A DNA stretch of 64,000 nucleotides from Pecten maximus (taxonomy: Eukaryota): assembly GCF_902652985.1 (NCBI RefSeq), contig NC_047030.1:13082001-13146000 (forward strand), read 5' to 3'. Positions 20-64,000 of this stretch are shown here, one piece after another (the stretch's first letter is position 1; each line of letters starts with the position of its first letter). The notes under the pieces were generated by a model that was not told where the DNA came from, did no database searches, and worked only from the letters and a program-made list of their open reading frames with translations. Made by a program: the position numbers and the translations under genes.

Positions 20-3000
20 TTTTATTGACTTCGAGGCGGCATAATTGTTTCGTCCTTTGCACATTTTCTTACAGTGCGATAAAGTGTTGAAAATAATTTT
101 AAACAAAGGAATCTTTATAACAAGTTTCGTTACGCTGAAGTAGAATAGAAGTATTAACTAGTAACTGTAGTAGCTTACTATTCGGTGTCAATGATGCTAA
201 TGTTTTTTTTAGTTAAATTACTTCCAAAATATAAGCTTCTTATCTTTCTACAGAACTAGAACTGGAACCAGAAACAGCTATGAGTTACTCATTCCTTTGT
301 TTGCTTGATGGAATCTTAAGTCCTAGTATTAGTTAGAGTGAGTTTGCTTTAGAAAGAAAAAAGAAAAAAAAAAGAAAAAGTCCTAAGACGAATTCTGGAT
401 ATAAGGAACTATTTTATCTGGTTCTATGAAATTCGTTATAAACAAATTTAACTGTATATAATAACTTTGTCCCTGCATTCTTTACCAAACATCAACCGAG
501 ATGAACAGTGCTTTAGAACTCGTAAACATAGATCTATAGAACATTTTGTACGGTATAGGCTCGGGTGTCGCTAAATCTGTTTCACTATCTATAAGAAGAA
601 AACACCGTTTAATGAGTACAGATATTGTCGCTTTATACGCCTCTTTATAGTCGCGTTCGTCATTGTTTTATTTTACTCCCTGGAATTGTTAAACCATATT
701 TGTTGTTTTTGCTTTGCTTCATAATTTGCTTGAGACAATTGTAAAACGTCGGCAAACAATACGACGATTTTTAAATCATGTTTTAGTTTATGCAAAATAA
801 TAAATTGTTTTATAGCAAAATTGAGATTTTGATTTTTACATTTAAAAGTACATCTATTAGGTAAGATAAGATATTGGTACATAAAAGATAGTTTGATTTT
901 GGCTGTGTGAAGTTAGCTCAACATACGACATACGACATACGACATTCAAAACTTCATATCTTGTGTTTTTACCAGCCAACGAGATAATTTTTGAATGTTC
1001 AGCGGCTCAACATACGACATACGACATTCAGATTTTGAATGTTCAGCCGCTGAACATACGACATACGACATTCAGAATTTTGATTTTGAATGTTCAGCGG
1101 CTCGACCTACGACATACGACATTCAAATTTTGAATGTTCAGCCGCTGAACATACGACATACGACATTCAGATTTTGAATGTTCAGCCGCTGAACATACGA
1201 CATACGACATTCAAAACTTCATATCTTGTGTTTTTACCAGCCAACGAGGTAACTTTTGAATGTTCAGCGGCTCAACATACGACATACGGCATTCAGATTT
1301 TGAATGTTCAGCCGCTGAACATACGACATACGACATTCAGATTTTGATTTTGAATGTTCAGCGGCTCGACATACGACATACGACATTCAAATTTTGAATG
1401 TTCAGCCGCTGAACATACGACATACGACATTCAGATTTTGAATGTTCAGCCGCTGAACATACGACATACGACATTCAAAACTTCATATCTTGTGTTTGTA
1501 CCAGCCAACGAGGTAACTTTTGAATGTTCAGCGGCTCAACATACGACATACGACATTCAGATTTTGAATGTTCAGCCGCTGAACATACGACATTCAGATT
1601 TTGATTTTGAATGTTCAGAGGCTCGACATACGACATACGACATTCAAATTTTGAATGTTCAGCCGCTGAACATACGACATACGACATTCAGATTTTGATT
1701 TTGAATGTTCAGCGGCTCGACATACGATATACGACATTCAGATTTTGAATGTTCAGCCGCTGAACATACGACATACGACATTCAAATTTTGAATGTTCAG
1801 CCGCTGAACATACGACATACGACATTCAGATTTTGATTTTGAATGTTCAGTGGCTCGTCATACGACATACGACATTCAAATTTTGAATGTTCAGCCGCTG
1901 AACATACGACATACGACATTCAGATTTTGAATGTTCAGCCGCTGAACATACGACATACGACATTCAGATTTTGATTTTGAATGTCCAGCGGCTCGACATA
2001 CGACATACGACATTCAGATTTTGAATGTTCAGCCGCTGAACATACGACATTCAGATTTTGATTTTGAATGTTCAGCGGCTCGACATACGACATACGACAT
2101 TCAAATTTTGAATGTTCAGCCGCTGAACATACGACATACGACATTCAAATTTTGAATGTTCAGCGGGTTTTAGCTGCGGGAGTTTTGCTGTAAATGCTCA
2201 GCCAGCCAACGAGATCTGGCAAACCGTTAAACGTTCATATCTTGTGTTTTTACCAGCCAACGAGGTATATTTTGAATGTTCAGCGGCTCAACATATGACA
2301 TACGACATTCAAATATTGAATGTTCGGCCGCTGAACATACGACATACGACATTCAAAACTTCATATCTTGTGTTTTTACCAGCCAACGAGGTAACTTTTG
2401 AATGTTCAGCGTCTCAACATACGACATACGACATTCAGATTTTGAATGTTCAGCCGCTGAACATACGACATACGACATTCAGATTTTGATTTTGAATGTT
2501 TAGCGGCTCGACCTACGACATACGACATTCAAATTTTGAATGTTCAGCCGCTGAACATACGACATACGACATTCAGATTTTGAATGTTTAGCCGCTGAAC
2601 ATACGACATACGACATTCAGATTTTGATTTTGAATGTCCAGCGGCTCGACATACGACATACGACATTCAAATTTTGAATGTTCAGCCGCTGAACATACGA
2701 CATACGACATTCATATTTTGAATGTTCAGCCGCTGAACATACGACATACGACATTCAAATTTTGAATGTTCAGCCGCTGAACATACGACATACGACATTC
2801 AAATTTTTAATGTTCAGCAGGTTTTAGCTGCGGGAGTTTTGCTGTAAATGCTCAGCCAGCCAACGAGATCCGGCAAACCGTTTAAAACGTTCATATCTTG
2901 TGTTTTTACCAGCCAACGAGGTATATTGTGAATGTTCAGCGGCTCAACATACGACATACGACATTCAGATTTTGAATGTTCAGCCGCTGAACATACGACA

Positions 3001-6000
3001 TACGACATTCAGATTTTGATTTTGAATGTTCAGCGGCTCGACAAACGACATACGACATTCAGATTTTGAATGTTCAGCCGCTGAACATACGACATACGAC
3101 ATTCAAAACTTCATATCTTGTGTTTTTACCAGCCAACGAGGTAACTTTTGAATGTTCAGCCGCTGAACATACGACATACGACATTCAGATTTTGAATGTC
3201 GTATGTCGTATGTTCAGCGGCTGAACATTCAAAATTTGAATGTCGTATGTCGTATGTCGAGCCGCTGGACATTCAAAATCAAAATCTGAATGTCGTATGT
3301 CGTATGTTCAGCGGCTGAACATTCAAAATCTGAATGTCGTATGTCGTATGTTCAGCGGCTGAACATTCAAAATTTGAATGTCGTATGTCGTATGTCGAGC
3401 CGCTGAACATTCAAAATCAAAATCTGAATGTCGTATGTCGTATGTTCAGCGGCTGAACATTCAAAAGTTACCTCGTTGGCTGGTAAAAACACAAGATATG
3501 AAGTTTTGAATGTCGTATGTCGTATGTTCAGCGGCTGAACATTCAAAATCTGAATGTCGTATGTCGTATGTTCAGCGGCTGAACATTCAAAAGTCACCTC
3601 GTTGGCTGGTACAAACACAAGATATGAAGTTTTGAATGTCGTATGTCGTATGTTCAGCGGCTGAACATTCAAAATCTGAATGTCGTATGTCGTATGTTGA
3701 GCCGCTGAACATTCAAAAGTTACCTCGTTGGCTGGTACAAACACAAGATATGAAGTTTTGAATGTCGTATGTCGTATGTTCAGCGGCTGAACATTCAAAA
3801 TCTGAATGCCGTATGTCGTATGTTGAGCCGCTGAACATTCAAAAGTTACCTCGTTGGCTGGTACAAACACAAGATATGAAGTTTTGAATGTCGTATGTCG
3901 TATGTTCAGCGGCTGAACATTCAAAATCTGAATGTCGTATGTCGTATGTTCAGCGGCTGAACATTCAAAATTTGAATGTCGTATGTCGTATGTCGATCCG
4001 CTGAACATTCAAAATCAAAATCTGAATGTCGTATGTCGTATGTTCAGCGGCTGAACATTCAAAATCTGAATGTCGTATGTCGTATGTTCAGCGGCTGAAC
4101 ATTCAAAATTTGAATGTCGTATGTCGTATGTCGAGCCGCTGAACATTCAAAATCAAAATCTGAATGTCGTATGTCGTATGTTCAGCGGCTGAACATTCAA
4201 AATCTGAATGCCGTATGTCGTATGTTGAGCCGCTGAACATTCAAAAGTTACCTCGTTGGCTGGTACAAACACAAGATATGAAGTTTTGAATGTCGTATGT
4301 CGTATGTTCAGCGGCTAAACATTCAAAATCTGAATGTCGTATGTCGTATGTTCAGCGGCTGAACATTCAAAATTTGAATGTCGTATGTCGTATGTTGAGC
4401 CGCTGAACATTCAAAAATTATCTCGTTGGCTGGTAAAAACACAAGATATGAAGTTTTGAATGTCGTATGTCGTATGTCGTATGTTGAGCTAACTTCACAC
4501 AGCCTTTGATTTTTGCATTTAAAGGCTCATCTACAATTAAGGACAATTCTACGATAAAGGATTGACCTATGGGTTATGAAAAAGAATGTATATAACAAAA
4601 ATATAATAAGAGAAGTACTATACGGATTGTATACATACACACAACATATGAGCATCCTTAAGTGTATATTGTAATGGATTAACTGTATCATATAGCTGGT
4701 TCATTCTTCTAGGACACATCAGTAATGCTAAGGGCCTATAGTGTTTACACCTAGGAGGCGACTTGGGGAAACTCAAACTAGATCAAAAGAATGACCAAAA
4801 TCGAATGGAGAATGCAGAAGATTAATTAGATTAAATTGAAAATTAATTTGGAGTCGATATATCGACTACACAAATGTTCAGGTGACTGATATATCCTCAT
4901 TAACAAAGCTGTGATCATGAACAGCACTGTTTGGTGATAACACAAAGAAAGCCTATCCGGTTTGACTCGGCTATATCATGTGGAATGCGTAACGGTTTTC
5001 TCTAATTCGGGACATGTGTATCCTCTAGTGTGGAAATGAAGAAACTGGCAGACCAGGTACTGTTAGCGATACAACAACTAACTTGTTCAGGTGTGAATTT
5101 CAGGTAATATTTTCTGTAGCCCTCAGGTAATTGCTTTCAACAGCTAGATGTATAATGACCAACATGTATATATAATATTTTCATTCACGGAATCAGTAAG
5201 TAAAAATTTCGTTTTCACCTATTTGACAAGAGTTTTGTAACATAGCTGTGAAAGCTTTCTTTTATCTTTTATTTTCCAGATGAAGATATGTACATTTATA
5301 GTATTTTGTGTAAATAATGACACAATTATTATTATAATTAATCATGTTGATCATTTATGAGACCTAATAATATCAAACAAATATTTGTAGATTGAAGTGT
5401 ATTATGTTTGTCTGATATATAGAAGGACGATACAGCTGTTGTATGATTAGTATTCCTCATTATGTAATATATACTGTATTTGTACATCCTTATTTAAGGT
5501 ACTATTCACTTACCAGGTATGTGCCTTTGCAGAATTTAAACATTAGTTAACGTTCTTAAAATTAAAACCGATGATTAATTTGTATTATGTCAGGCATCGG
5601 TTTCGTCAACGGTCCAAATTTTCCCGTAGGAATGCATTCCTTAGCTAAGATTTTCACCTAAAATCCATAGGAGCATTAATGGATTTAATGGTAAAATTTA
5701 AGCATAGGAATTTCGTAATGGTTTTCAATGGGGAATAATACGTTAAGGAGTTTCTTTAAGGTACGGAATATTAGGGGGCTGATTTAGTATAATGTTTAAT
5801 ATCCATTGGACTTGCACTATATCACTTTTTTACATAGAAAGGTATGTGAATATGGGTAAAAGTTTGCTATTTGATAACGTCGGTTCCCTTTGACATGACA
5901 TCTTCCTCAGATGCAAAAGGCATTGTGGACGTGATGCCTGGGTCCTGTATGGAGAGATACAGACTATACCTGTACATATGTAGGTTATCTTCTGTACCCA

Positions 6001-21194: not shown

Positions 21195-23355
21195 ATGAAA
21201 TCTATTCAGCAACCAGCTCTCGATCTACAAACCCTGTTATGTGTTACAGGTGAGTCATTCCATTTTAATTAAGGATTTCTGCTGGCGTTGTCAAGGGTTA
21301 AAGTTCACGATGGTATCGATATTCTGAAGTTCATTAGCTTTGTATTGATACACTGTAAATCATCTTATTTTCGCGTGTGATTAATTTTCGAGTATTTCGC
21401 ACGCGAATAATAGTCCCGCACACTTATCGCCGCGAAAAGGTATGAACCACAGGTACAGTAGGCCTTTTATCAGTATAAATCGCGAAATTGAATTGCCAAG
21501 AAGAGAGAAATAAACTAGCCACGAAAGTAATTGGTTTACGGTATGTATTAGAATTAATTTTGAAAACACACTATCAAGTAATTACTGACTGTAAAGGGGA
21601 TCATATAACGGAGATACGAGGTAATGGATCCAGCGTATATTATATTTATTCAATATTTCTTTATTCATTTTGCCATTCCTACAAAACAAAATATGTGCTC
21701 CTGTACTTATCCCCTTTATCTCACTGTGATACATAGCTTGTATTACTATGTATTCTAAGTAGTTCATAATTGGATTATGCATGATACAAGAGAATTGGAA
21801 ACTTTCGTTTGGCAGATAATTGATCGTCTATTGATTTTTTGTTTTATTTTGAATTACATTGATATATGGTTCTCTTAGTTTCCATATATATAATAAGATA
21901 CAACAATTATATTAAACTTTACACCTCTGTGGAACTTGACAGGAAGTCGCTTAATTCGTGGATCCCTTAAATGGTTTCTGTGTTTAGCATAAGAATAAAT
22001 ATAAATGATGTTTTTGTATTCACAAGCATGATAACGTTTTGTTTCTGGTCAATATTTTTATTTTATGTCAATTAACTTTGAAGAGCTCTATAGCGATTAT
22101 AATTCGCGGAGGTTTTATTTTCGCGTGAATAGGTTCCGAGAACGAAAACGCGAATTATTGATCCTGCGATATACAGTATCACATAACAGATCACTCATTG
22201 CCTAAATGATACTATTTTATTTTCCATATTATTTAACATCTTTTATTATGTAAAATCTTATACTAATAGCATATCATGTTTTCAGTGTTTTACATAGCTC
22301 TGGTACCCGCCATGACTGATGCTAGTACTACCTTTACCGTCTTTTCTTCCATTCCAACTACTGCAACACAAACTACTACCATTTCAACGAGTGCCACTCA
22401 AACTACAGCCGCTACAACGAGTGCCACTCATACTACTGCTACTCCAACAAGTGCCACTCACATCACAGCCACTACTTTGACCCCTACTCCAACGAGTGCC
22501 ACTAAAACTACTGTCACTTCAACGAGTGCCACTCAAACTACAGCCGATACAACGAGTGCCACTCATACTACTGCTACTCCAACAAGTGCCACTCACATCA
22601 CAGCCACTACTTTGACCCCTACTCCAACGAGTGCCACTCAAACTACAGCCGCTATAACGAGTGCCACTCATACTACTGCTACTCCAACAAGTGCCACTCA
22701 CATCACAGCCACTACTTTGACCCCTACTCCAACGAGTGCCACTAAAACTACTGTCACTTCAACGAGTGCCACGCATACTACTGCCACTCCAACAAGTGCC
22801 ACTCACATCACAGCCACTACTTTGACCCCTACTCCAACGAGTGCCACTCAAACTACTGTCACTTCAATCATTGCTACACAAGCTACTGTCACTTCAACGA
22901 GTGCCACGCATACTACTGCCACTCCAACAAGTGCCACTCACATCACAGCCACTACTTTGACCCCTACTCCAACGATTACCACGCAAGCTACTGTCACTTC
23001 AACGAGTGCCACTCATACTACTGCTACTCCAACAAGTGCCACTCACATCACAGCCACTACTTTGACCCCTACTCCAACGATTACCACGCAAACTACTGTC
23101 ACTTCAATCATTGCTACACAAACTACTGTCACTTCAACGATTGCCACGCCAACAACTGCCACTGGAATAACCCCTACTCCAACGACCGTCAGCCCAATAA
23201 CTTCCACGGCAGTCAGTTCCACTATTACGACTCAGACAATTTCAAACTCACTTGGTTCTGGTGCTTCAAAATGTGCAAAAATCAACACAGTCGTCATGTC
23301 CATCATAACTTTTGTGTATACTGTATACAATGGTTTGCAATCTACATACATGTAG
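21195..23355 (+). CDS. Gene A: Thr-rich mucin-like protein, signal peptide + probable GPI anchor, ~374 aa; exons 21195-21249 and 22286-23355 (alternative in-frame acceptor 22298)
   Basis: tttacAG|ATG, 55-nt phase-1 exon with GTGAGT donor; spliced N-terminus MKSIQQPALDLQTLLCVTVFYIALVPAMTDA; TSATHTTATP/TSATHITATTLTPTP repeats; tail GSGASKCAKINTVVMSIITFVYTVYNGLQSTYM. Confidence 0.8.
21353..21541. mobile_element. Tc1/mariner-type MITE (CTGTAAA...TTTACGG ends, internal TTTCGCG motifs)
   Basis: Short TIRs and inverted ttttcgcg/cgcgaaa motifs; related pieces at ~22095-22178 and 51307-51546. Confidence 0.6.
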
Positions 23356-53133: not shown

Positions 53134-56100
53134 ATGCGCCATATTGTTTCGTAACCACATGTGATATCGCCATATTGTTTGCCGTCACCATATGTGATCG
53201 GCGTCATATTGTTTCCCAGCACCACATGTGATATCACTATATTGTTTCCCGTCACCACATATGATATCGTCATATTGTTTCCCGTCACCACATGTGATAT
53301 CCGTCATATTGTTTCCCTGTCACCACATGTGATATCGTCATATTGTTTCCCTGTCACCTCATATGATATCGCCATATTGTTTCCCGTCACCTCATATGAT
53401 ATCCGTCATATTGTTTCCCGGAACCACATATGATATCGTCCTATTGTTTCCCGGCACCACATATGATATCGTCCTATTGTTTCCCATCACCACATATGAT
53501 ATCGTCATATTGTTTCCCGTCAACACATGTAATATCGCCATATTGTTTGCCGTCACCATATGTGATATCGCCATATTGTTTGCCGTCACCATATGTGATC
53601 GGCGTCATATTGTTTCCCGGCACCAAATGTGATATCGCCATATTGTTTCCCTGTCACCTCATATGATATCGCCATATTGTTTCCCGTCACCTCATATGAT
53701 ATCCGTCATATTGTTTCCCGGCACCACATATGATATCGTCATATTGTTTCCCGGCACCACATATGATATCGTCCTATTGTTTCCCTGTCACCACATGTGA
53801 TATCCGTCATATAGTTTCCCATCACCACATATGATATCGTCATATTGTTTCCCGTCACCACATATGATATCGCCATATTGTTTGCCGTCACCATATGTGA
53901 TATCGCCATATTGTTTGCCGTCACCATATGTGATATCGCCATATTGTTTGCCGTCACCATATGTGATCGGCGTCATATTGTTTCCCGGCACCACATGTGA
54001 TATCGCCATATTGTTTCCCTGTCACCACATGTAATATCGCCATATTGTTTTCCGTCACCATATGTGATATCGCCATATTGTTTCCCTGTCACCATATGTG
54101 ATCGGCGTCATATTGTTTTCCGTCACCACATGTGATATCGCCATATTGTTTCCCTGTCACCACATGTGATATCGCCATATTGTTTCCCGTCACCACATGT
54201 GATATCGCCATATTGTTTCCCGTCACCACATGTGATCGGTGTCATATTGTTTCCCGGCACCACATGTGATATCGCCATATTGTTTCCCTGTCACCTCATA
54301 TGATATCGCCATATTGTTTCCCGTCACCACATGTGATATCGCCATATTGTTTCCCGTCACCACATGTGATATCACCATATTGTTTGCCGTCACCATATGT
54401 GATCGGCGTCATATTGTTTCCCGGCACCACATGTGATATCGCCATATTGTTTCCCTGTCACCTCATATGATATCGCCATATTGTTTCCCGTCACCTCATA
54501 TGATATCCGTCATATTGTTTCCCGGCACCACATATGATATCGTCCTATTGTTTCCCGGCACCACATATGATATCGTCCTATTGTTTCCCTGTCACCACAT
54601 GTGATATCCGTCATATAGTTTCCCATCACCACATATGCTATCGTCATATTGTTTCCCGTCACCACATATGATATCGCCATATTGTTTGCCGTCACCATAT
54701 GTGATATCGCCATATTGTTTGCCATCACCATATGTGATATCGCCATATTGTTTGCCGTCACCATATGTGATCGGCGTCATATTGTTTCCCGGCACCACAT
54801 GTGATATCGCCATATTGTTTCCCTGTCACCACATGTAATATCGCCATATTGTTTGCCGTCACCATATGTGATATCGCCATATTGTTTCCCTGTCACCACA
54901 TGTGATATCGTAATATTGTTTCCCGTCACCACATGTGATATCGCCATATTGTTTCCCTGTCACCACATGTGATATCGCCATATTGTTTCCCGTCACCACA
55001 TGTGATATCGCCATATTGTTTCCCGTCATCACATGTGATATCGCCATATTGTTTCTCGTCACCACATGTGATATCGTCATATTGTTTCCCGTCACCTCAT
55101 ATGATATCCGTCATATTGTTTCCCTGTCACCACATATGATATCGCCATATTGTTTCCCGTCACCACATATGATATCGTCATATTGTTTCCCTGTCACCAC
55201 ATGTGATATCGCCATATTGTTTCCCGTCACCACATATGATATCGCCATATTGTTTCCCGGCACCACATATGATATCGTCATATTGTTTCCCGGCACCACA
55301 TGTGATATCGCCATATTGTTTCCCTGTCACCTCATATGATATCGCCATATTGTTTCCCGTCACCTCATATGATATCCGCCATATTGTTTCCCGGCACCAC
55401 ATATGATATCGTCCTATTGTTTCCCGGCACCACATATGATATCGTCCTATTGTTTCCCTGTCACCACATGTGATATCCGTCATATAGTTTCCCATCACCA
55501 CATATGATATCGTCATATTGTTTCCCGTCACCACATATGATATCGCCATATTGTTTCCCGGCACCATATGTGATATCGCCATATTGTTTGCCGTCACCAT
55601 ATGTGATATCGCCATATTGTTTGCCGTCACCATATGTGATCGGCGTCATATTGTTTCCCGGCACCACATGTGATATCGCCATATTGTTTGCCGTCACCAT
55701 ATGTGATATCGCCATATTGTTTGCCGTCACCATATGTGATATCGCCATATTGTTTGCCGTCACCATATGTGATATCGCCATATTATTTGCCGTCACCATA
55801 TGTGATATCGCCATATTGTTTGCCGTCACCATATGTGATCGGCGTCATATTGTTTCCCGGCACCACATGTGATATCGCCATATTGTTTCCCTGTCACCAA
55901 GGGGCCGCGGTGGCCGAGTGGTTAAGGTGTCCCGACACTTTAACACTAGCCCTCCACCTCTGAGTTGCGAGTTCGAAACCTACGTGGGGCAGTTGCCAGG
56001 TACTGACCGTTGGCCGGTGGTTTTTCTCCGGGTACTCCGGCTTTCCTCCACTTCCAAAACCTGGCACGTCCTTAAATGACCCTGGCTGTTAATAGGACGT

Positions 56101-56340
56101 TAAACAAAAACAATCCCTGTCACCACATGTGATATCGCCATATTCTTTCCCTGTCACCACATGTGATATCGTAATATTGTTTCCCTGTCACCACATGTGA
56201 TATCGCCATATTGTTTCCCGTCACCACATATGATATCCGCCATATTTTCCACGTCAACACCTTAGATATCCGCCATATTCCCCCCTTGAACACCCTTGAT
56301 ATCCGCCATATTGTATTCCGTATAACATATGATGCCCGCC
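53134..56340 (+). repeat. 33/34-bp satellite array (~3 kb) with higher-order structure
   Basis: Unit gatatcgccatattgtttcccgtcaccacatgt; the variant catatagtttcccatc recurs at ~53808, ~54612, ~55481. Confidence 0.95.
55900..56113 (+). mobile_element. Young full-length tRNA-derived V-domain SINE inserted in the satellite
   Basis: A and B boxes, V-type core, aaacaaaaacaa tail, 12-bp TSD TCCCTGTCACCA (55888-55899, 56114-56125). Confidence 0.95.
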
Positions 56341-58705: not shown

Positions 58706-59537
58706 GTAATATCAGTATATTTAACTATCGTCCAGGATGATACCTTCTCATAGTATTTACATTGTTTTATATAATACAAAGTATCACTATATATTATTAG
58801 TGACTATAATATTCATTACAATATTTTGTGAATTAAGTTTCTGTTGTTTTCTGAGCTCTGCGTTTATTATTTTGAAAATTACTTTTTTATTTAACAAAAT
58901 GATATGGAAGTGACATATTGTATGGTTGAAGACAAATACAATGAGATTTTATCTATAAACGTTATCAATTACTGAATCAGCCGTAATCAGACATTGTCGT
59001 GTCAATTCTTTCTTGTAAATATGTTTAGCGCTGAAAAGTTATGACTTTATTTCTTGCTGATCAGTTTAAAATAGTGATAGTTGAGTATGGTTTACTTGAG
59101 GCAATCAGATATTATACACTATTTTTGAATGTAAAACGCACAGAAAACATAATTCGCATATTAAGCATCAAAACTTAGGTCCTTAACATCACTATAAGGA
59201 GTCTTAGAAGGACGAATCAGTGGTATGACGCAGTTTAATTCTTAACTCTACTGTATTGAGAAGTCCGCTTCTAATTATCAATTGGTGTAGAAATGTGTTA
59301 ATATATTGTGTGTCTTTTGAGTAATCATTTAAAGTCCTCTATACTCCCCATCAGAATTCATAATATTTCCAAAATATTAGCTAAAATAACAATTCGACTT
59401 GAAATAAGTGATAGATAATTTTTAGTTTATTTAAAAAAATTCTGTCCGCAAAACAATGTATTTATAACTTCCTTATAACAACAAAGGCATCAATCCATCT
59501 GTAATGTAATCACTTGTTTCCTTTCGTGGATTTCCAG

Positions 59538-59592
59538 ATGCAGCTTCCGGTATATTACATATCACTTGTAGTTCTGACAATCGTCCTGTACG
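59538..59592 (+). CDS. Gene D signal-peptide exon (partial gene; next exon unresolved)
   Basis: atttccAG|ATG, 55 nt, phase 1, GTAAGT donor; encodes MQLPVYYISLVVLTIVLY; same size and phase as genes A-C. Confidence 0.7.
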
Positions 59593-60310
59593 GTAAGTAT
59601 GACACTCCCTCGATCAGATAAATATTATTAAATACCCCTAGTTGTGTTAACCATCGTTTTGTGCGGTAAGTATGGCACTCTTTTGGTCAGATATATATTA
59701 TCAAATACCCCTAGTTGTTCTGACAATCGTCCTGTACGGTAAGTATGACACTCCCTCGATCAGATAAATATTATCAAATACCCCTAGTTGTGTTGACCAT
59801 CGTTTTGTGCGGTAAGTATGACACTCTCGCGGTCAGATATATATTATCAAATACCCCTAGTTGTGTTGACCATCGTTTTGTGCGGTAAGTATGACACTCT
59901 CGCGGTCAGATATATATTATCAAATACCCCTAGTTGTGTTAACCATCGTTTTGTGCGGTAAGTATGACACTCCCTCGATCAGATAAATATTATTAAATAC
60001 CCCTAGTTGTTCTGACTATTGTCCTGTACGGTAAGTATGACACTCTCTTGGTCAGATATATATTATCAAATACCCCTAGTTGTGTTGACCATCGTTTTGT
60101 GCGGTAAGTATGACACTCTCGCGGTCAGATATATATTATCAAATACCCCTAGTTGTGTTGACCATCGTTTTGTGCGGTAAGTATGACACTCTCGCGGTCA
60201 GATATATATTATCAAATACCCCTAGTTGTGTTGACCATCGTTTTGTGCGGTAAGTATGACACTTCCTCGGTCAGATATATATATATTGACTATCGTACTG
60301 TACGGTAATT
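59552..60310 (+). repeat. 73-bp tandem array of the gene D exon end plus splice donor (10 regular donors + degenerate units)
   Basis: CG|GTAAGTATG donors at 59593, 59666, 59739, 59812, 59885, 59958, 60031, 60104, 60177, 60250; shortened unit with donor at 60305. Confidence 0.95.
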
Positions 60311-60414
60311 ATTCCACTCTTTCGGTCAGATAAATACTATTTAACATCGCGGTAAGTATTCCTGTCTGTCGTCGGATAAATGTAATCTACCATCCTGGTG
60401 AGTATCGGTTACCG

Positions 60415-63400
60415 GTAACGTGTATAACTGGACCTGTACCTGTATCTATGCTTGTATCTGTTACGTGTACCGGTTACGTGTATACCTGGACCTGTACCTG
60501 TATCTATGCTTGTACCTGTTACGTGTACCGGTTACGTGTATACATGGACCTGTACCTGTATCTATGCTTGTACTTGTTACGTGTACCGGTTACGTGTATA
60601 CCTGGACCTGTACCTGTATCTATGCTTGTACCTGTTACGTGTACCGGTTACGTGTATACCTGGACCTGTACCTGTACCTGTTACCTGTATCTGTTACCTG
60701 TATCTGTTACGTGTTACTTATACTGACCTGTTACTTGTACCTGTTACTTGTACCTGTTACGTGTTACCTGTACCTGCTACCTGTAACGTGTTACCTGTAC
60801 TGTACCTGTTACCTGTATCTGTTACGTGTTACCTGTTGCTGTTACCTGTTACATGTTACCTATACTGTACCTGTTACGTGTTACCTATACTGTACCTGTT
60901 ACATGTTACCTATACTGTACCTGTTACGTGTTACCTATACTCTACCTGTTACCTGTACCTGTTACGTGTGACCTATACTGTACCTGTTACCTGTTACCTA
61001 TACTGTACCTGTTACGTGTTACCTATACTGTACCTGTAACGTGTTACCTATACTGTACCTGTAACGTGTTACCTATACTGTACCTGTTACCTATACTGTA
61101 CCTGTTACGTGTTGCCTGTACCTGTTACCTGTACCTGATACCTGTACCTGTTACCTATACCTGTTACGTGTTACCTGTACCTGTTACGTGTTACCTATAC
61201 TATATCTGTTACGTGTTACCTATACTCTACCTGTTACCTGTACCTGTTACGTGTTTCCTTTACTGTACCTGTTTCGTTTTACCTATACTGTACCTGTTAC
61301 CTGTACCTGTTACGTGTTACCTATATTGTACCTGTTACGTGTTACCTGTTACGTATTACCTGTATACCTGCACCTGTTACTGTTACCTGTACTGTAACAT
61401 GTACGTGTACCTTGTATACATGTTACCTGCATACCAGATACCTGAATACCTGTACCTGTAACTATACCTGTATACCTATTACCTGTTACCTATATACCTG
61501 TATACATGTTACCTGTATACCTGTATACATGTTACCTGTATACCTGTACCTGTTACCTGTATACCTGTTACCTATATACCTGTATACCTGTATACCTGTA
61601 TACCTGTATACCTGTAACCTGTTACCTGTAACCTGTATACCTGTAACCTGTTACCTGTATACCTGTATACCTGTATACCCGTATACCTGTATACCTGTAT
61701 ACCTGTATACCCGTATACCCGTATACCTGTATACCTGTATACCTGTAACCTGTATACCTGTAACCTGTTACCTGTAACCTGTATACCTGTATACCTGTAT
61801 ACCTGTATACCTGTAACCTGTTACCTGTAACCCGTATACCTGTATACCTGTAACCTGTTACCTGTATACCTGTATACCTGTATACCTATATACCTGTATA
61901 CCTGTAACCTGTAACATGTTACCTGTATACCTGTATACCTGTAACCTGTTACCTGTATACCTGTATACCTACTACCTATATACCTGTATACCTGTATACC
62001 TGTTACCTGTTACCTGTATACCTGTATACCTGTTACCTGTAACCTCTTACCTGTTACCTGTATACCTGTATATCTGTATACCTGTATATCTGTATACCTG
62101 TATATCTGTATACCTGTATACCTGTATACCTGTGACCTGTATACCTGTATATCTGTATACATGTATACCTGTATACATGTTACCTGTATACCTGTATACC
62201 TGTACCGGTACCTATATATGGACCTGTATACCTGTATACCTGTTACCTGTATACCTGTATACCTGTATACCTGTGTACCCGTATACCTGTGTACCCGTAT
62301 ACCTGTGTACCTGTGTACCTGTTACCTGTATACCTGTATACCTGTATACCTATACCTGTACCGGTAACTATATATGGACCTGTATACCTGTATACCTGTA
62401 TACCTGTACCGGTAACTATATATGGACCTGTATACCTGTATACCTGTACCGGTACCTATATATGGACCTGTATACCTGTATACCTGTTACCTGTATACCT
62501 GTATACCTGTGTACCCGTATACCTGTGTACCCGTATACCTGTGTACCTGTGTACCTGTGTACCTGTATACCTGTATACCTGTATACCTATACTTGTACCG
62601 GTAACTATATATGGACCTGTATACCTGTACCTGTTACCTGTATACCTGTATACCTGTATACCTATACCTGTACCGGTAACTATATATGGACCTGTATACC
62701 TGTACCTGTTACCTGTATACCTGTATACCTGTATACTTGTATACCTATACCTGTACCTATATATGGACCTGTATACCTGTTACCTGAATACCTGTATACC
62801 TGTTACCTGTATATCTGTATATCTGTATACCTGTATACCTGTATACCTGTACCTGTACCTATATATGGACCTGTATACCTGTTACCTGTATACATGTTAC
62901 CTGTATACATGTTACCTGTATACCTGTATACCTGTATACCTGTATATCTGTATACCTGTACCTGTACCTATATATGGGCCTGTATACCTGTTACTTGTAT
63001 ACATGTTACCTGTTACCTGTATACCTGTATACCTGTTACCTGTATACCTGTATACCTGTATACCTGTATACCTGTTACCTGTATACCTGTTACCTGTATA
63101 CATGTTACCTGTATACCTGTATACCTGTTACCTGTATACCTGTTACCTGTATACCTGTTACCTGTATACCTGTTACCTGTATACCTGTTACCTGTATACC
63201 TGTATACCTATACCTGTACCGGTAACTATATGGACCTGTATACCTGTACCTGTTACCTGTATACCTGTATACCTGTATACTTGTATACCTATACCTGTAC
63301 CTATATATGGACCTGTATACCTGTTACCTGAATACCTGTATACCTGTATACCTGTATACCTGTTACCTGTATATCTGTATACCTGTATACCTGTACCTGT

Positions 63401-63790
63401 ACCTATATATGGACCTGTATACCTGTTACCTGTACCTATATATGGACCTGTATACCTGTTACCTGTAAACATGTTACCTGTATACCTGTATACCTGTATA
63501 CCTGTATACCTGTTACCTGTATACATGTTACCTGTATACCTGTATACCTGTTACCTGTATACCTGTTACCTGTATACCTGTATACCTGTATATCTGTATA
63601 CCTGTACCTGTACCTGTACCTATATATGGGCCTGTATACCTGTTACTTGTATACATGGTACCTGTTACCTGTATACCTGTATACCTGTATACCTGTTACC
63701 TGTATACCTGTTACCTGTATACCTGTACCTGTACCTATATATGGACCTGTATACCTGTTACCTGTATACATGTTACCTGTATACCTGTAC
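60415..63790 (+). repeat. 3.4-kb compound CCTGT(A/TA/ATA) micro/minisatellite
   Basis: 58-bp units at 60429-60670 grade into 6-8-bp units cctgta/cctgtta/cctgtata. Confidence 0.95.
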
Positions 63791-64000
63791 CCATCACTGT
63801 AGATATGTGATGGGAATACGGCTCGTACTTCCAAATGTCTAATCTACAGTGGTTCAATTTTTTGATGGGCGGCCTCTCGATGTACTTTGTTGGATTTCCT
63901 GGAGATCTTTTTCAAACTTGTCAATGGCTGATATATAATTCAGACGTCATATATCATTCAGAAGCATTGCATCAACGCGCATACTTAAAGGACGACGGAA

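What the first reader, a model, noticed from the sequence alone, without database searches (positions are those of the whole stretch)
59538..60310. Amplified signal-peptide micro-exon array with almost purely synonymous variation
Seen: the 73-bp repeat copies the 3' end of the gene D signal exon and its GTAAGT donor. A CTT-G>CTA-G change gives each unit an AG, so nine units read ctAG|24 nt|GTAAGT: symmetric phase-1 modules encoding VVLTIVL(C/Y), e.g. 59642-59665. Among units and the parent exon I count about 10 synonymous differences (GTT/GTG, CTG/TTG/TTA, ACA/ACC/ACT, ATC/ATT, GTC/GTT, CTT/CTA, GTA/GTT) against one replacement (TAC/TGC). An upstream CAG gives in-frame 48-nt versions (DIYYQIPL+module; open in 7 of 9 units), and the shortened last unit (60275-60304) lost exactly 18 nt and still encodes DIYILTIVLY. 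Known: schistosome micro-exon genes use short symmetric exons to vary secreted proteins. Inference: variable inclusion could lengthen the hydrophobic core (signal peptide vs membrane anchor) and add Cys. The 49-nt spacers are probably too short for adjacent units to splice, which would force skipping combinations. Caveats: acceptors lack a good pyrimidine tract, and the synonymous bias could be inherited from a diverged paralog or allele.
Basis: partly seen in the sequence, partly recalled or inferred. Interest (0 to 1): 0.88.

Follow-up and report, generated by a model that had tools for sequence, protein, structure and literature searches.

The report
Splice-junction minisatellite with in-frame pseudo-exons
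A 73-base repeat in a king-scallop gene copies the end of its signal-peptide exon plus the splice signal about ten times into the first intron; such repeats are known and common in this genome, but these copies differ almost only at silent codon positions, so there is roughly a one-in-five chance that some serve as tiny extra exons.

Summary
A 73-bp tandem array (59593-60304) has nine full units plus a shortened one. It repeats the last ~42 nt of a predicted signal-peptide exon (59538-59592) and its GTAAGT donor. Each full unit reads CTAG | 24 nt | GTAAGT and encodes VVLTIVL(C/Y) in the exon's frame. Nine of ten nucleotide changes among modules are synonymous, against 1-4 of 10 in the other five frames (P about 2e-4 under random placement).

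My best reading (0.55) is a splice-junction or "mirage" minisatellite, like human F7 intron 7 and the amphioxus cases, whose downstream copies stay silent. The scan already found this kind of array elsewhere in this genome (s1-784564, s1-783131). Donor-bearing arrays are about five times commoner genome-wide than a reversed control.

The exon-like units grow more diverged from the exon with distance. That fits successive copies of a selected exon end. It softens the synonymous bias to P about 0.002-0.006, which is plausible given how many arrays the scan has looked at.

Real cassette micro-exons remain possible (0.2). No paralogue that could have donated the Cys-type unit exists in the assembly.

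The parts
59538..59592 (+). Predicted signal-peptide exon of the unannotated gene D (ATG at 59538, 18 codons plus 1 nt, phase 1). Its last ~42 nt form the first, authentic copy of the repeat.
   Evidence: Sequence and translation. A pyrimidine-rich tract and CAG lie directly upstream, and GTAAGTAT directly downstream. Homology to the units extends about 18 nt upstream of the module (12/18 ungapped matches, anchored alignment p about 0.02-0.04). There is no RNA evidence.
59593..60249 (+). Nine full 73-nt units (u1-u9). Each is GTAAGT, 43 nt of intron-derived sequence ending in CTAG, then a 24-nt module. Modules lie at 59642-59665 and every 73 nt up to 60226-60249.
   Evidence: Module types: B/B' (Cys) in u1, u3, u4, u5, u7, u8, u9; A/A' (Tyr, exon-like) in u2 and u6.
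60250..60304 (+). Shortened unit u10 (55 nt). An 18-nt deletion removed the TAG acceptor. The module remnant is exon-like (A''), and the following donor is weakened to GTAATT.
60305..60409 (+). Decayed distal units of 47 and 46 nt plus a GTGAGT-headed remnant. Their modules are broken by deletions of 26 and 27 nt.
60410..63800 (+). The rest of the same predicted intron: a 58-nt array, then 3.4 kb of 7/8-nt satellite (CTGTTAC / TACCTGTA). The long '+' ORFs here are by-products of a stop-free repeat.

Best explanation
This is a splice-junction ('mirage'-type) minisatellite in the first intron of a small, unannotated, single-copy gene for a secreted Thr-rich, four-Cys peptide in Pecten maximus. 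A 73-nt segment spanning the last ~42 nt of the signal-peptide exon and the first ~31 nt of the intron was duplicated in tandem and then amplified. As a result, the authentic donor at 59593 is followed by ten further donor copies.

Inferred: splicing uses the most upstream donor and joins it to the last exon about 5 kb downstream (600 or 618 nt past the window end), and the other units are removed with the intron.

The synonymous-looking variation does not come from selection on the copies. The array majority type (B) is an old neutral lineage, about 25-30% diverged from the exon. The exon-like units (u2, u6, u10) are successive copies of the exon end, which is itself under purifying selection, and they have been pushed distally as the array grew. 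Most differences among modules are therefore substitutions that passed selection in the real exon. Chance and the scan's selection of a striking case supply the rest.
For: 1. Anatomy of the known class. The first monomer spans the exon-intron boundary and the donor is reiterated. In the human F7, LMNB2 and PDGF arrays only the first donor is used, in CBS and 6-16 only the first three, and amphioxus mirages do not disturb splicing.

2. The class is common here. Three GGTAAGT at 47-77 nt spacing occur 13,691 + 12,781 times, against 2,062 + 2,758 for the reversed control. Earlier notes of the scan found such arrays in other genes of this genome. The window and this intron are full of other minisatellites.

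3. Direct exchange between exon and array. The u2 module equals the parent in 23 of 24 nt, and its following 31 intron nt in 31 of 31.

4. Gradient. The exon-like units u2, u6 and u10 differ from the parent module by 1/24, 3/24 and 3/19, and their following intron by 0, 4 and 6 of 31.

5. Uniform divergence of the B lineage from the exon lineage. It is 6/18 upstream of the module, 7/24 in the module and 4/31 in the intron part.

6. Distal units are decayed, with out-of-frame deletions, a lost acceptor and a weakened donor.

7. Under a model with one selected lineage and one neutral lineage, the bias softens from P = 2.5e-4 to 0.002-0.006, or one case per 170-470 arrays.

8. Gene model. The exon is phase 1, and two acceptors 18 nt apart at L017:600 and L017:618 both continue the frame into an 80- or 74-codon ORF that ends in TAA followed by AATAAA.
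Against: - Even the favourable non-functional model leaves P about 0.002-0.006 for 9 of 10 synonymous changes.
- Two fourfold-degenerate sites carry three states each, yet only one of about 16 replacement sites varies.
- Synonymous sites look more diverged than the neighbouring intron clock predicts: 5 differences at about 7.7 sites against 4 of 31 between A and B. No model I tried explains this well.
- Variable intron columns cluster just after the donor (6 of 12 in columns 10-21), while the 28 nt before the TAG are nearly invariant (2 of 28; Fisher p = 0.005). Functional 3' splice sites would show this pattern too.
- A crude pyrimidine count does not make the module acceptor worse than the predicted exon-2 acceptors (12 against 11-12 of 20).
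- No transcript evidence was obtained for any part of the gene model.
Confidence: 0.55

Rival explanations
1. One reading: some or all of the nine CTAG | 24 nt | GTAAGT modules are real cassette micro-exons. Including one adds eight hydrophobic residues, VVLTIVL(C/Y), in frame between the signal exon and the last exon. That lengthens the hydrophobic core from about 13 to about 21 residues (signal peptide towards signal anchor) and may add a Cys. The 49-nt spacers would favour inclusion of non-adjacent units.
For: - The modules are 24 nt, phase 1 and symmetric, and every full unit keeps AG and GTAAGTAT.
- 9 of 10 changes are synonymous in this frame only.
- The sequence upstream of the TAG shows no such bias: it has K/I and Gln/stop changes, so the apparent constraint begins at the proposed acceptor.
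- The 28 nt before the TAG are nearly invariant, while columns 10-21 vary.
- No paralogue could have donated the Cys type.
- PMC3087553 proposes that a mirage unit's exonic part could become a real exon.
Against: - There are no transcript data.
- In the studied members of the class, pseudo-sites are silent or only the first one or two are used.
- The invariance of columns 22-53 is too complete for splice-signal constraint alone. It implies recent shared ancestry, which also removes independence from the counts.
- Four B units are identical over 73 nt, so few lineages have actually been tested by selection.
- Distal units decay.
- Signal-peptide cores usually tolerate V/I/L exchanges (background knowledge), so strict synonymy is more than selection on such a peptide would predict.
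- Thousands of donor-bearing array matches in the genome create a look-elsewhere effect.
- No canonical branch-point motif was seen by eye, and T follows the AG.
Confidence: 0.2
2. The array is silent, but the Cys-type (B) block, meaning the module plus about 21 nt of following intron, was imported by one short gene-conversion or unequal-exchange event. The source would be a diverged functional copy of the exon: a paralogue or a deeply diverged allele that is absent from this haploid assembly. The synonymous bias would then be inherited from that functional source.
For: A and B differ by 5 synonymous and 1 replacement change in the module, plus 3-4 changes in the next 21 intron nt, while the flanking 32 nt are almost identical. 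That pattern resembles a conversion tract. Raw-read heterozygosity in this species is 1.71%, and the assembly is a collapsed haplotype (PMC7191990).
Against: No second copy of the unit, the exon or any synonymous spelling of its peptide exists in the assembly. The last-exon peptide is single-copy as well. This reading also fails to explain the four minor variants, which are all synonymous.
Confidence: 0.1
3. The repeat acts through its reiterated, near-perfect U1-binding sites (G|GTAAGTAT, eleven of them within about 760 nt) and not through coding. It could be an alternative-donor set, or a U1-recruiting platform near the promoter that supports transcription or suppresses premature polyadenylation in a 5-kb AT-rich repeat-filled intron.
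For: The donor 9-mer is invariant in ten consecutive copies. Downstream pseudo-sites can be functional when the first is inactivated, or when they are perfect matches.
Against: Using any downstream donor without an acceptor reads into a TAA after nine more codons, and the 73-nt unit shifts the frame. This reading does not explain the codon-position pattern. Donor invariance among young copies carries no weight. It is pure inference.
Confidence: 0.05
4. Gene D is not a real gene, or each unit is its own mini first exon. Every unit carries an ATG directly after GTAAGT, in frame with the module: 22 codons plus 1 nt to the next donor, with a TATA-like run inside the unit. The coding-like pattern would then be coincidence or would reflect something other than cassette exons.
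For: No protein matching the last-exon peptide is in either protein library. The unit ATG-ORF is open in 7 of 9 units and reads like a signal peptide.
Against: The libraries also lack the neighbouring 748-aa ORF, so their silence says nothing about annotation. Exon phase, two in-phase acceptors, the stop codon and the AATAAA fit a two-exon secreted-peptide gene. Promoters every 73 nt, with a donor about 15 nt from the cap, are implausible. The N-terminal part of the unit ORF varies by replacement and nonsense changes.
Confidence: 0.07

Closest known systems
Human minisatellites whose first monomer spans an exon-intron boundary (F7 intron 7 37-bp VNTR; CBS intron 13; interferon-inducible 6-16; LMNB2; PDGF), PMC1557585
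   Same: A tandem array starts inside an exon end, so the authentic donor is followed by identical pseudo-donors in the intron. Unit sizes are similar (37-100 bp) and so are copy numbers (5-25).
   Different: Here about 42 nt of exon are copied, against 4 nt in F7. Each unit therefore holds a recognisable coding remnant, an AG makes it a formally complete in-frame 24-nt exon, and the copies differ almost only at synonymous positions. Donor usage was measured in the human cases but not here.
Amphioxus 'mirages' (Adh3, globin genes BflGb6/BflGb9), PMC3087553
   Same: Both are minisatellite-like tandem duplications of an intron-exon boundary. Many units carry AG/GT signals. Both show concerted evolution inside the array with boundary units excluded. 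The paper explicitly models an exonic part of a unit becoming a real exon.
   Different: The animal phylum differs. In amphioxus, RT-PCR showed regular splicing, and no codon-position bias was reported. Here the boundary is that of a signal-peptide exon.
Schistosome micro-exon genes (MEGs), PMC10526429
   Same: Both involve short symmetric exons in genes for secreted proteins, with variation by exon skipping as the proposed logic.
   Different: MEG micro-exons (3-81 bp) build most of the mature protein and are separated by long introns of up to 5 kb. Here the candidate modules are near-identical tandem copies 49 nt apart, they would sit in the signal peptide, and the mature peptide is in one ordinary exon. 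There is no sequence relationship.
Tandem exon duplication with mutually exclusive splicing, PMC9013439
   Same: New candidate exons arise by local tandem duplication of an existing exon.
   Different: Only the 3' part of the exon is copied, and the acceptor is a new AG rather than the exon's own. The copies lack the start codon, so they could only add to the parent exon and could not replace it.

Membership tests
Splice-junction ('mirage' / F7-IVS7-type) minisatellite | Head-to-tail tandem array of a short unit (tens of bp) | tested here: met
   Period 73, 9.7 copies, 89% matches, no indels.
Splice-junction ('mirage' / F7-IVS7-type) minisatellite | The first monomer spans an exon-intron boundary, so the authentic donor sequence recurs in the intron | tested here: met
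   The unit equals the last ~42 nt of the predicted exon plus the first ~31 nt of the intron. GTAAGT recurs at 59593 + 73n. The exon itself is predicted from sequence only.
Splice-junction ('mirage' / F7-IVS7-type) minisatellite | Only the most upstream donor (or the first few) is used | not testable with these tools
Splice-junction ('mirage' / F7-IVS7-type) minisatellite | Copy number varies between alleles or individuals | not testable with these tools
   The assembly holds a single haploid copy of the locus.
Schistosome-type micro-exon gene | Most of the coding region is built from many symmetric micro-exons separated by long introns | tested here: not met
   The mature peptide lies in one exon of about 240 nt. 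The candidate modules are 49 nt apart.
Schistosome-type micro-exon gene | Transcripts show combinatorial skipping of the micro-exons | not testable with these tools
   No RNA data.
Tandemly duplicated, mutually exclusive exons | The whole exon is duplicated with its own acceptor and donor, and the copies are interchangeable | tested here: not met
   Homology to the parent stops about 18 nt upstream of the module. Similarity further upstream is no better than in shuffles. The units lack the parent's ATG region.

The most novel reading that the evidence does not exclude
A mirage-type minisatellite caught in the act of exonisation. The tandem copies of a signal-peptide exon end would be used as an array of interchangeable 24-nt cassette micro-exons, kept in frame and synonymous by selection. 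They would tune the length of the hydrophobic core of a secreted scallop peptide (cleaved signal versus membrane anchor) and add Cys residues.
Probability: 0.2. Interest if true: 0.8.

Novelty: new member of a known kind. Interest (0 to 1): 0.4.

Why it matters
If the units are silent, this is one more example of a repeat class that is strikingly abundant in the scallop genome. Its interest would then lie in being a small fossil record of an exon's past synonymous states, and a natural test bed for how the spliceosome picks the first of eleven near-perfect donors.

If some units are spliced, it would be the first documented case of a splice-junction minisatellite turning into an array of cassette micro-exons, a route to new exons that has so far only been proposed as a model (PMC3087553). 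It would also be an unusual way to vary a signal peptide. A handful of RT-PCR or long-read cDNA reads would decide between the two.

Tried and rejected
- **RNA evidence.** I did not try further, and read laying was therefore unusable.
- **Annotated or assembled protein.** The last-exon peptide (searched by reference, exon by exon) found nothing with the search for homologous proteins or with the 1.84-billion-protein HMMER search. As a calibration, the neighbouring 748-aa ORF also found nothing, so these blanks say nothing about whether gene D is annotated.
- **Paralogue donor for the Cys-type unit.** Four searches found only this array: a DNA search with 361 nt, the exact module with up to 3 mismatches, and two fully degenerate codon patterns. 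The last-exon peptide is single-copy.
- **Whole-exon duplication.** I tested whether the unit is a copy of the whole exon, with CAG aligned to CAG or ATG to ATG. Unconstrained local alignment of the unit's first 49 nt to the region upstream of the module is no better than in shuffles. Only about 18 nt of anchored extension is supported (my first anchored script had a slicing bug and was replaced).
- **Weak acceptor as an argument against splicing.** A crude pyrimidine count does not separate the module acceptor from the predicted exon-2 acceptors, so I dropped this argument.
- **Long '+' ORFs at 60420-63842 as coding sequence.** Rejected. They lie in a stop-free 7/8-nt satellite that is open in several frames.

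Full report
**Where this is.** The window is G000:C16:13082001-13146000 of a 918,306,378-bp assembly in 3,983 contigs. Those figures are exactly the ones published for the king scallop Pecten maximus (PMC7191990). Earlier notes of the scan also call it a scallop.

**The observation**

Tandem Repeats Finder gives a 73-bp array at 59575-60282 with 9.7 copies, 89% matches and no indels. Anchoring on the donor shows GTAAGT at 59593 and every 73 nt up to 60250. GTAATT follows at 60305, GTAAGT at 60352 and GTGAGT at 60398, heading progressively shorter and more decayed units of 55, 47 and 46 nt.

The parent exon is 59538-59592. A pyrimidine-rich tract and CAG precede an ATG, followed by 18 codons and one extra base (phase 1), then GTAAGTAT. 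Each of the nine full units ends in CTAG, then 24 nt, and is followed by GTAAGT. In the parent's frame, seven modules read VVLTIVLC and two read VVLTIVLY.

- The 48-nt CAG version is open in 7 of 9 units.
- The last unit is shortened by exactly 18 nt and still in frame.
- The spacers are 49 nt.

**The gene**

The array has no other copy in the genome. The window ends inside the intron. About 600 nt beyond the window end (locus L017), a 130-codon open frame contains two acceptors 18 nt apart, at L017:600 and L017:618. Both continue the phase-1 frame of the exon. The frame runs 80 or 74 codons through a Thr-rich, four-Cys peptide to a TAA, with AATAAA 24 nt later.

Gene D is therefore most simply a two-exon gene for a small secreted mucin-like peptide. 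Its 5-kb intron consists of the 73-bp array, a 58-bp array and 3.4 kb of 7/8-nt satellite. The last-exon peptide is single-copy and has no match in either protein library. The neighbouring 748-aa ORF is also absent, so that silence does not show the gene is unannotated.

**The synonymous bias is real**

Among the parent and units u1-u10 there are ten nucleotide changes in the module. Nine are synonymous in the exon's frame, and the single replacement is TAC/TGC. Scored in the other five frames, the same changes give 1-4 synonymous of 10. Random placement that preserves the transition/transversion mix gives P = 1.8e-4, and the binomial gives 2.5e-4.

Upstream of the TAG, the unit's in-frame changes are replacements or a stop. 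No paralogue explains the pattern. No other place in the assembly carries the Cys-type module with up to three mismatches, or spells VVLTIVL[Y/C] in any synonymous way.

**The events are fewer and less independent than they look**

The 16 variable columns among u1-u9 resolve into two haplotype blocks:
- **Block A:** the A module plus an 'alpha' intron start, identical to the parent exon end and its own intron.
- **Block B:** the B module plus a 'beta' intron start, the array majority. Four B units are identical over all 73 nt.

A and B differ at six module sites (five synonymous) and at three to four of the next 21 intron sites. Columns 22-53 are almost invariant in all units (2 of 32). In the part of that stretch that derives from the exon, all units differ from the parent at 6 of 18 sites. 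So the whole array descends from one founder unit that is about 25-30% diverged from the exon. Exon-like blocks were copied into it later: u2 matches the parent in 23 of 24 module nt and 31 of 31 following intron nt.

The exon-like units show a gradient with distance. Units u2, u6 and u10 differ from the parent by 1/24, 3/24 and 3/19 in the module, and by 0, 4 and 6 of 31 in the following intron. That is what one expects if the array grows next to the exon and keeps snapshots of the exon end. Changes between snapshots are then substitutions that survived selection in the real exon.

If half of the divergence is assigned to a selected lineage and half to a neutral one, the probability of 9 of 10 synonymous changes rises to 0.002-0.006.

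**This is a known class, and it is abundant here**

PMC1557585 describes several human genes with a minisatellite whose first monomer spans an exon-intron boundary. In F7, LMNB2 and PDGF only the authentic, most upstream donor is used. In CBS and 6-16 the first two pseudo-sites are used as well.

PMC3087553 describes the amphioxus mirages. It notes that many units carry AG/GT signals yet do not disturb splicing, reports concerted evolution within arrays with boundary units excluded, and proposes that an exonic part of a unit could become a real exon.

In the scallop genome, three GGTAAGT spaced 47-77 nt apart occur 26,472 times, against 4,820 for the reversed control. At least six separate arrays lie in the first 3 Mb of one chromosome. 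With that many arrays, and a reader choosing the most striking one, a P of a few per thousand is not decisive.

Even the kindest non-functional model leaves the pattern unusual. Two fourfold sites carry three states each, while only one replacement site varies. Synonymous sites appear more diverged than the adjoining intron (5 of about 7.7 against 4 of 31), which none of my models explains.

Intron variation clusters just after the donor and avoids the 28 nt before the TAG (Fisher p = 0.005), as functional 3' splice sites would. By a crude pyrimidine count, the module acceptor is no worse than the predicted exon-2 acceptors.

Against this, the near-total identity of columns 22-53 is more than splice-signal constraint would give. 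The distal units have lost acceptor, frame and donor quality. Signal-peptide cores normally tolerate V/I/L exchanges (background knowledge), so strict synonymy is more than selection on such a peptide predicts.

**Mechanism and odds**

- **Silent array (0.55).** Shown: the array, its register on the exon-intron boundary, the in-frame modules, the codon-position bias, the exon-to-array copying, the gradient, and the abundance of the class. Inferred: the first donor is used and the array is removed with the intron, and the bias is inherited from the selected exon.
- **Real cassette micro-exons (0.2).** They would add eight hydrophobic residues per module to a roughly 13-residue core.
- **Import of the B block from a paralogue or allele missing from the assembly (0.1).**
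- **A non-coding role of the reiterated U1 sites (0.05).** Using a later donor alone runs into a TAA after nine codons and shifts the frame.
- **Not a gene, or per-unit first exons (0.07).**

**Verdict.** This is a new member of a known kind of repeat, and its unusual codon-position pattern is cheap to test.

Noticed in passing
window 59599-60249 (each unit, columns 7-9): Every unit has an ATG directly after GTAAGT, in the same frame as the module: 22 codons plus 1 nt up to the next donor. The ORF reads like a signal peptide and is open in 7 of 9 units. It is probably coincidental, but it makes each unit formally a complete start-codon exon.
   Followed up: partly
L017:600-841 (600-841 nt beyond the window end): This is the predicted last exon of gene D. 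Two acceptors 18 nt apart are both in phase 1. It encodes a Thr-rich four-Cys peptide, then TAA and AATAAA. It is single-copy in the genome and has no match in 1.84 billion protein representatives.
   Followed up: partly
window 60410-63800: A 58-nt array is followed by 3.4 kb of CTGTTAC / TACCTGTA satellite filling the same intron. Its core motif CCTGTAC is also the last seven bases before the final G of the A-type module, so the larger satellite may have grown from the same junction. It produces stop-free '+' ORFs of up to 517 codons that are not genes.
   Followed up: no
whole genome: Tandem arrays carrying GGTAAGT in each unit (47-77 nt spacing) give 26,472 matches, against 4,820 for the reversed motif. 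Donor-bearing minisatellites are a major repeat class in Pecten maximus.
   Followed up: partly
window 53137-55899 and 56114-56319: An 83-copy array of a 33-bp unit has a 368-bp higher-order period, and a degenerate continuation follows. It lies between gene C and gene D.
   Followed up: no
window 989-3199 (+) and 3181-4416 (reverse orientation): Two long arrays of the same 44-bp unit meet head to head, forming a large inverted tandem-repeat structure. It produces mirror-image ORFs on both strands (1354-1698 +, 3367-4008 -).
   Followed up: no
window 59503-59508: A minimal ATG-TAA start-stop lies about 30 nt upstream of the exon's ATG, downstream of a TATA-like TATTTATAA at about 59461. Whether it is in the 5' UTR depends on the unknown transcription start.
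   Followed up: no
window 22276-23355: A 359-codon Thr/Ala/Ser-rich mucin-like ORF is built from 30/105/135/240-bp nested repeats. Its composition resembles the Thr-rich part of the gene D peptide.
   Followed up: no
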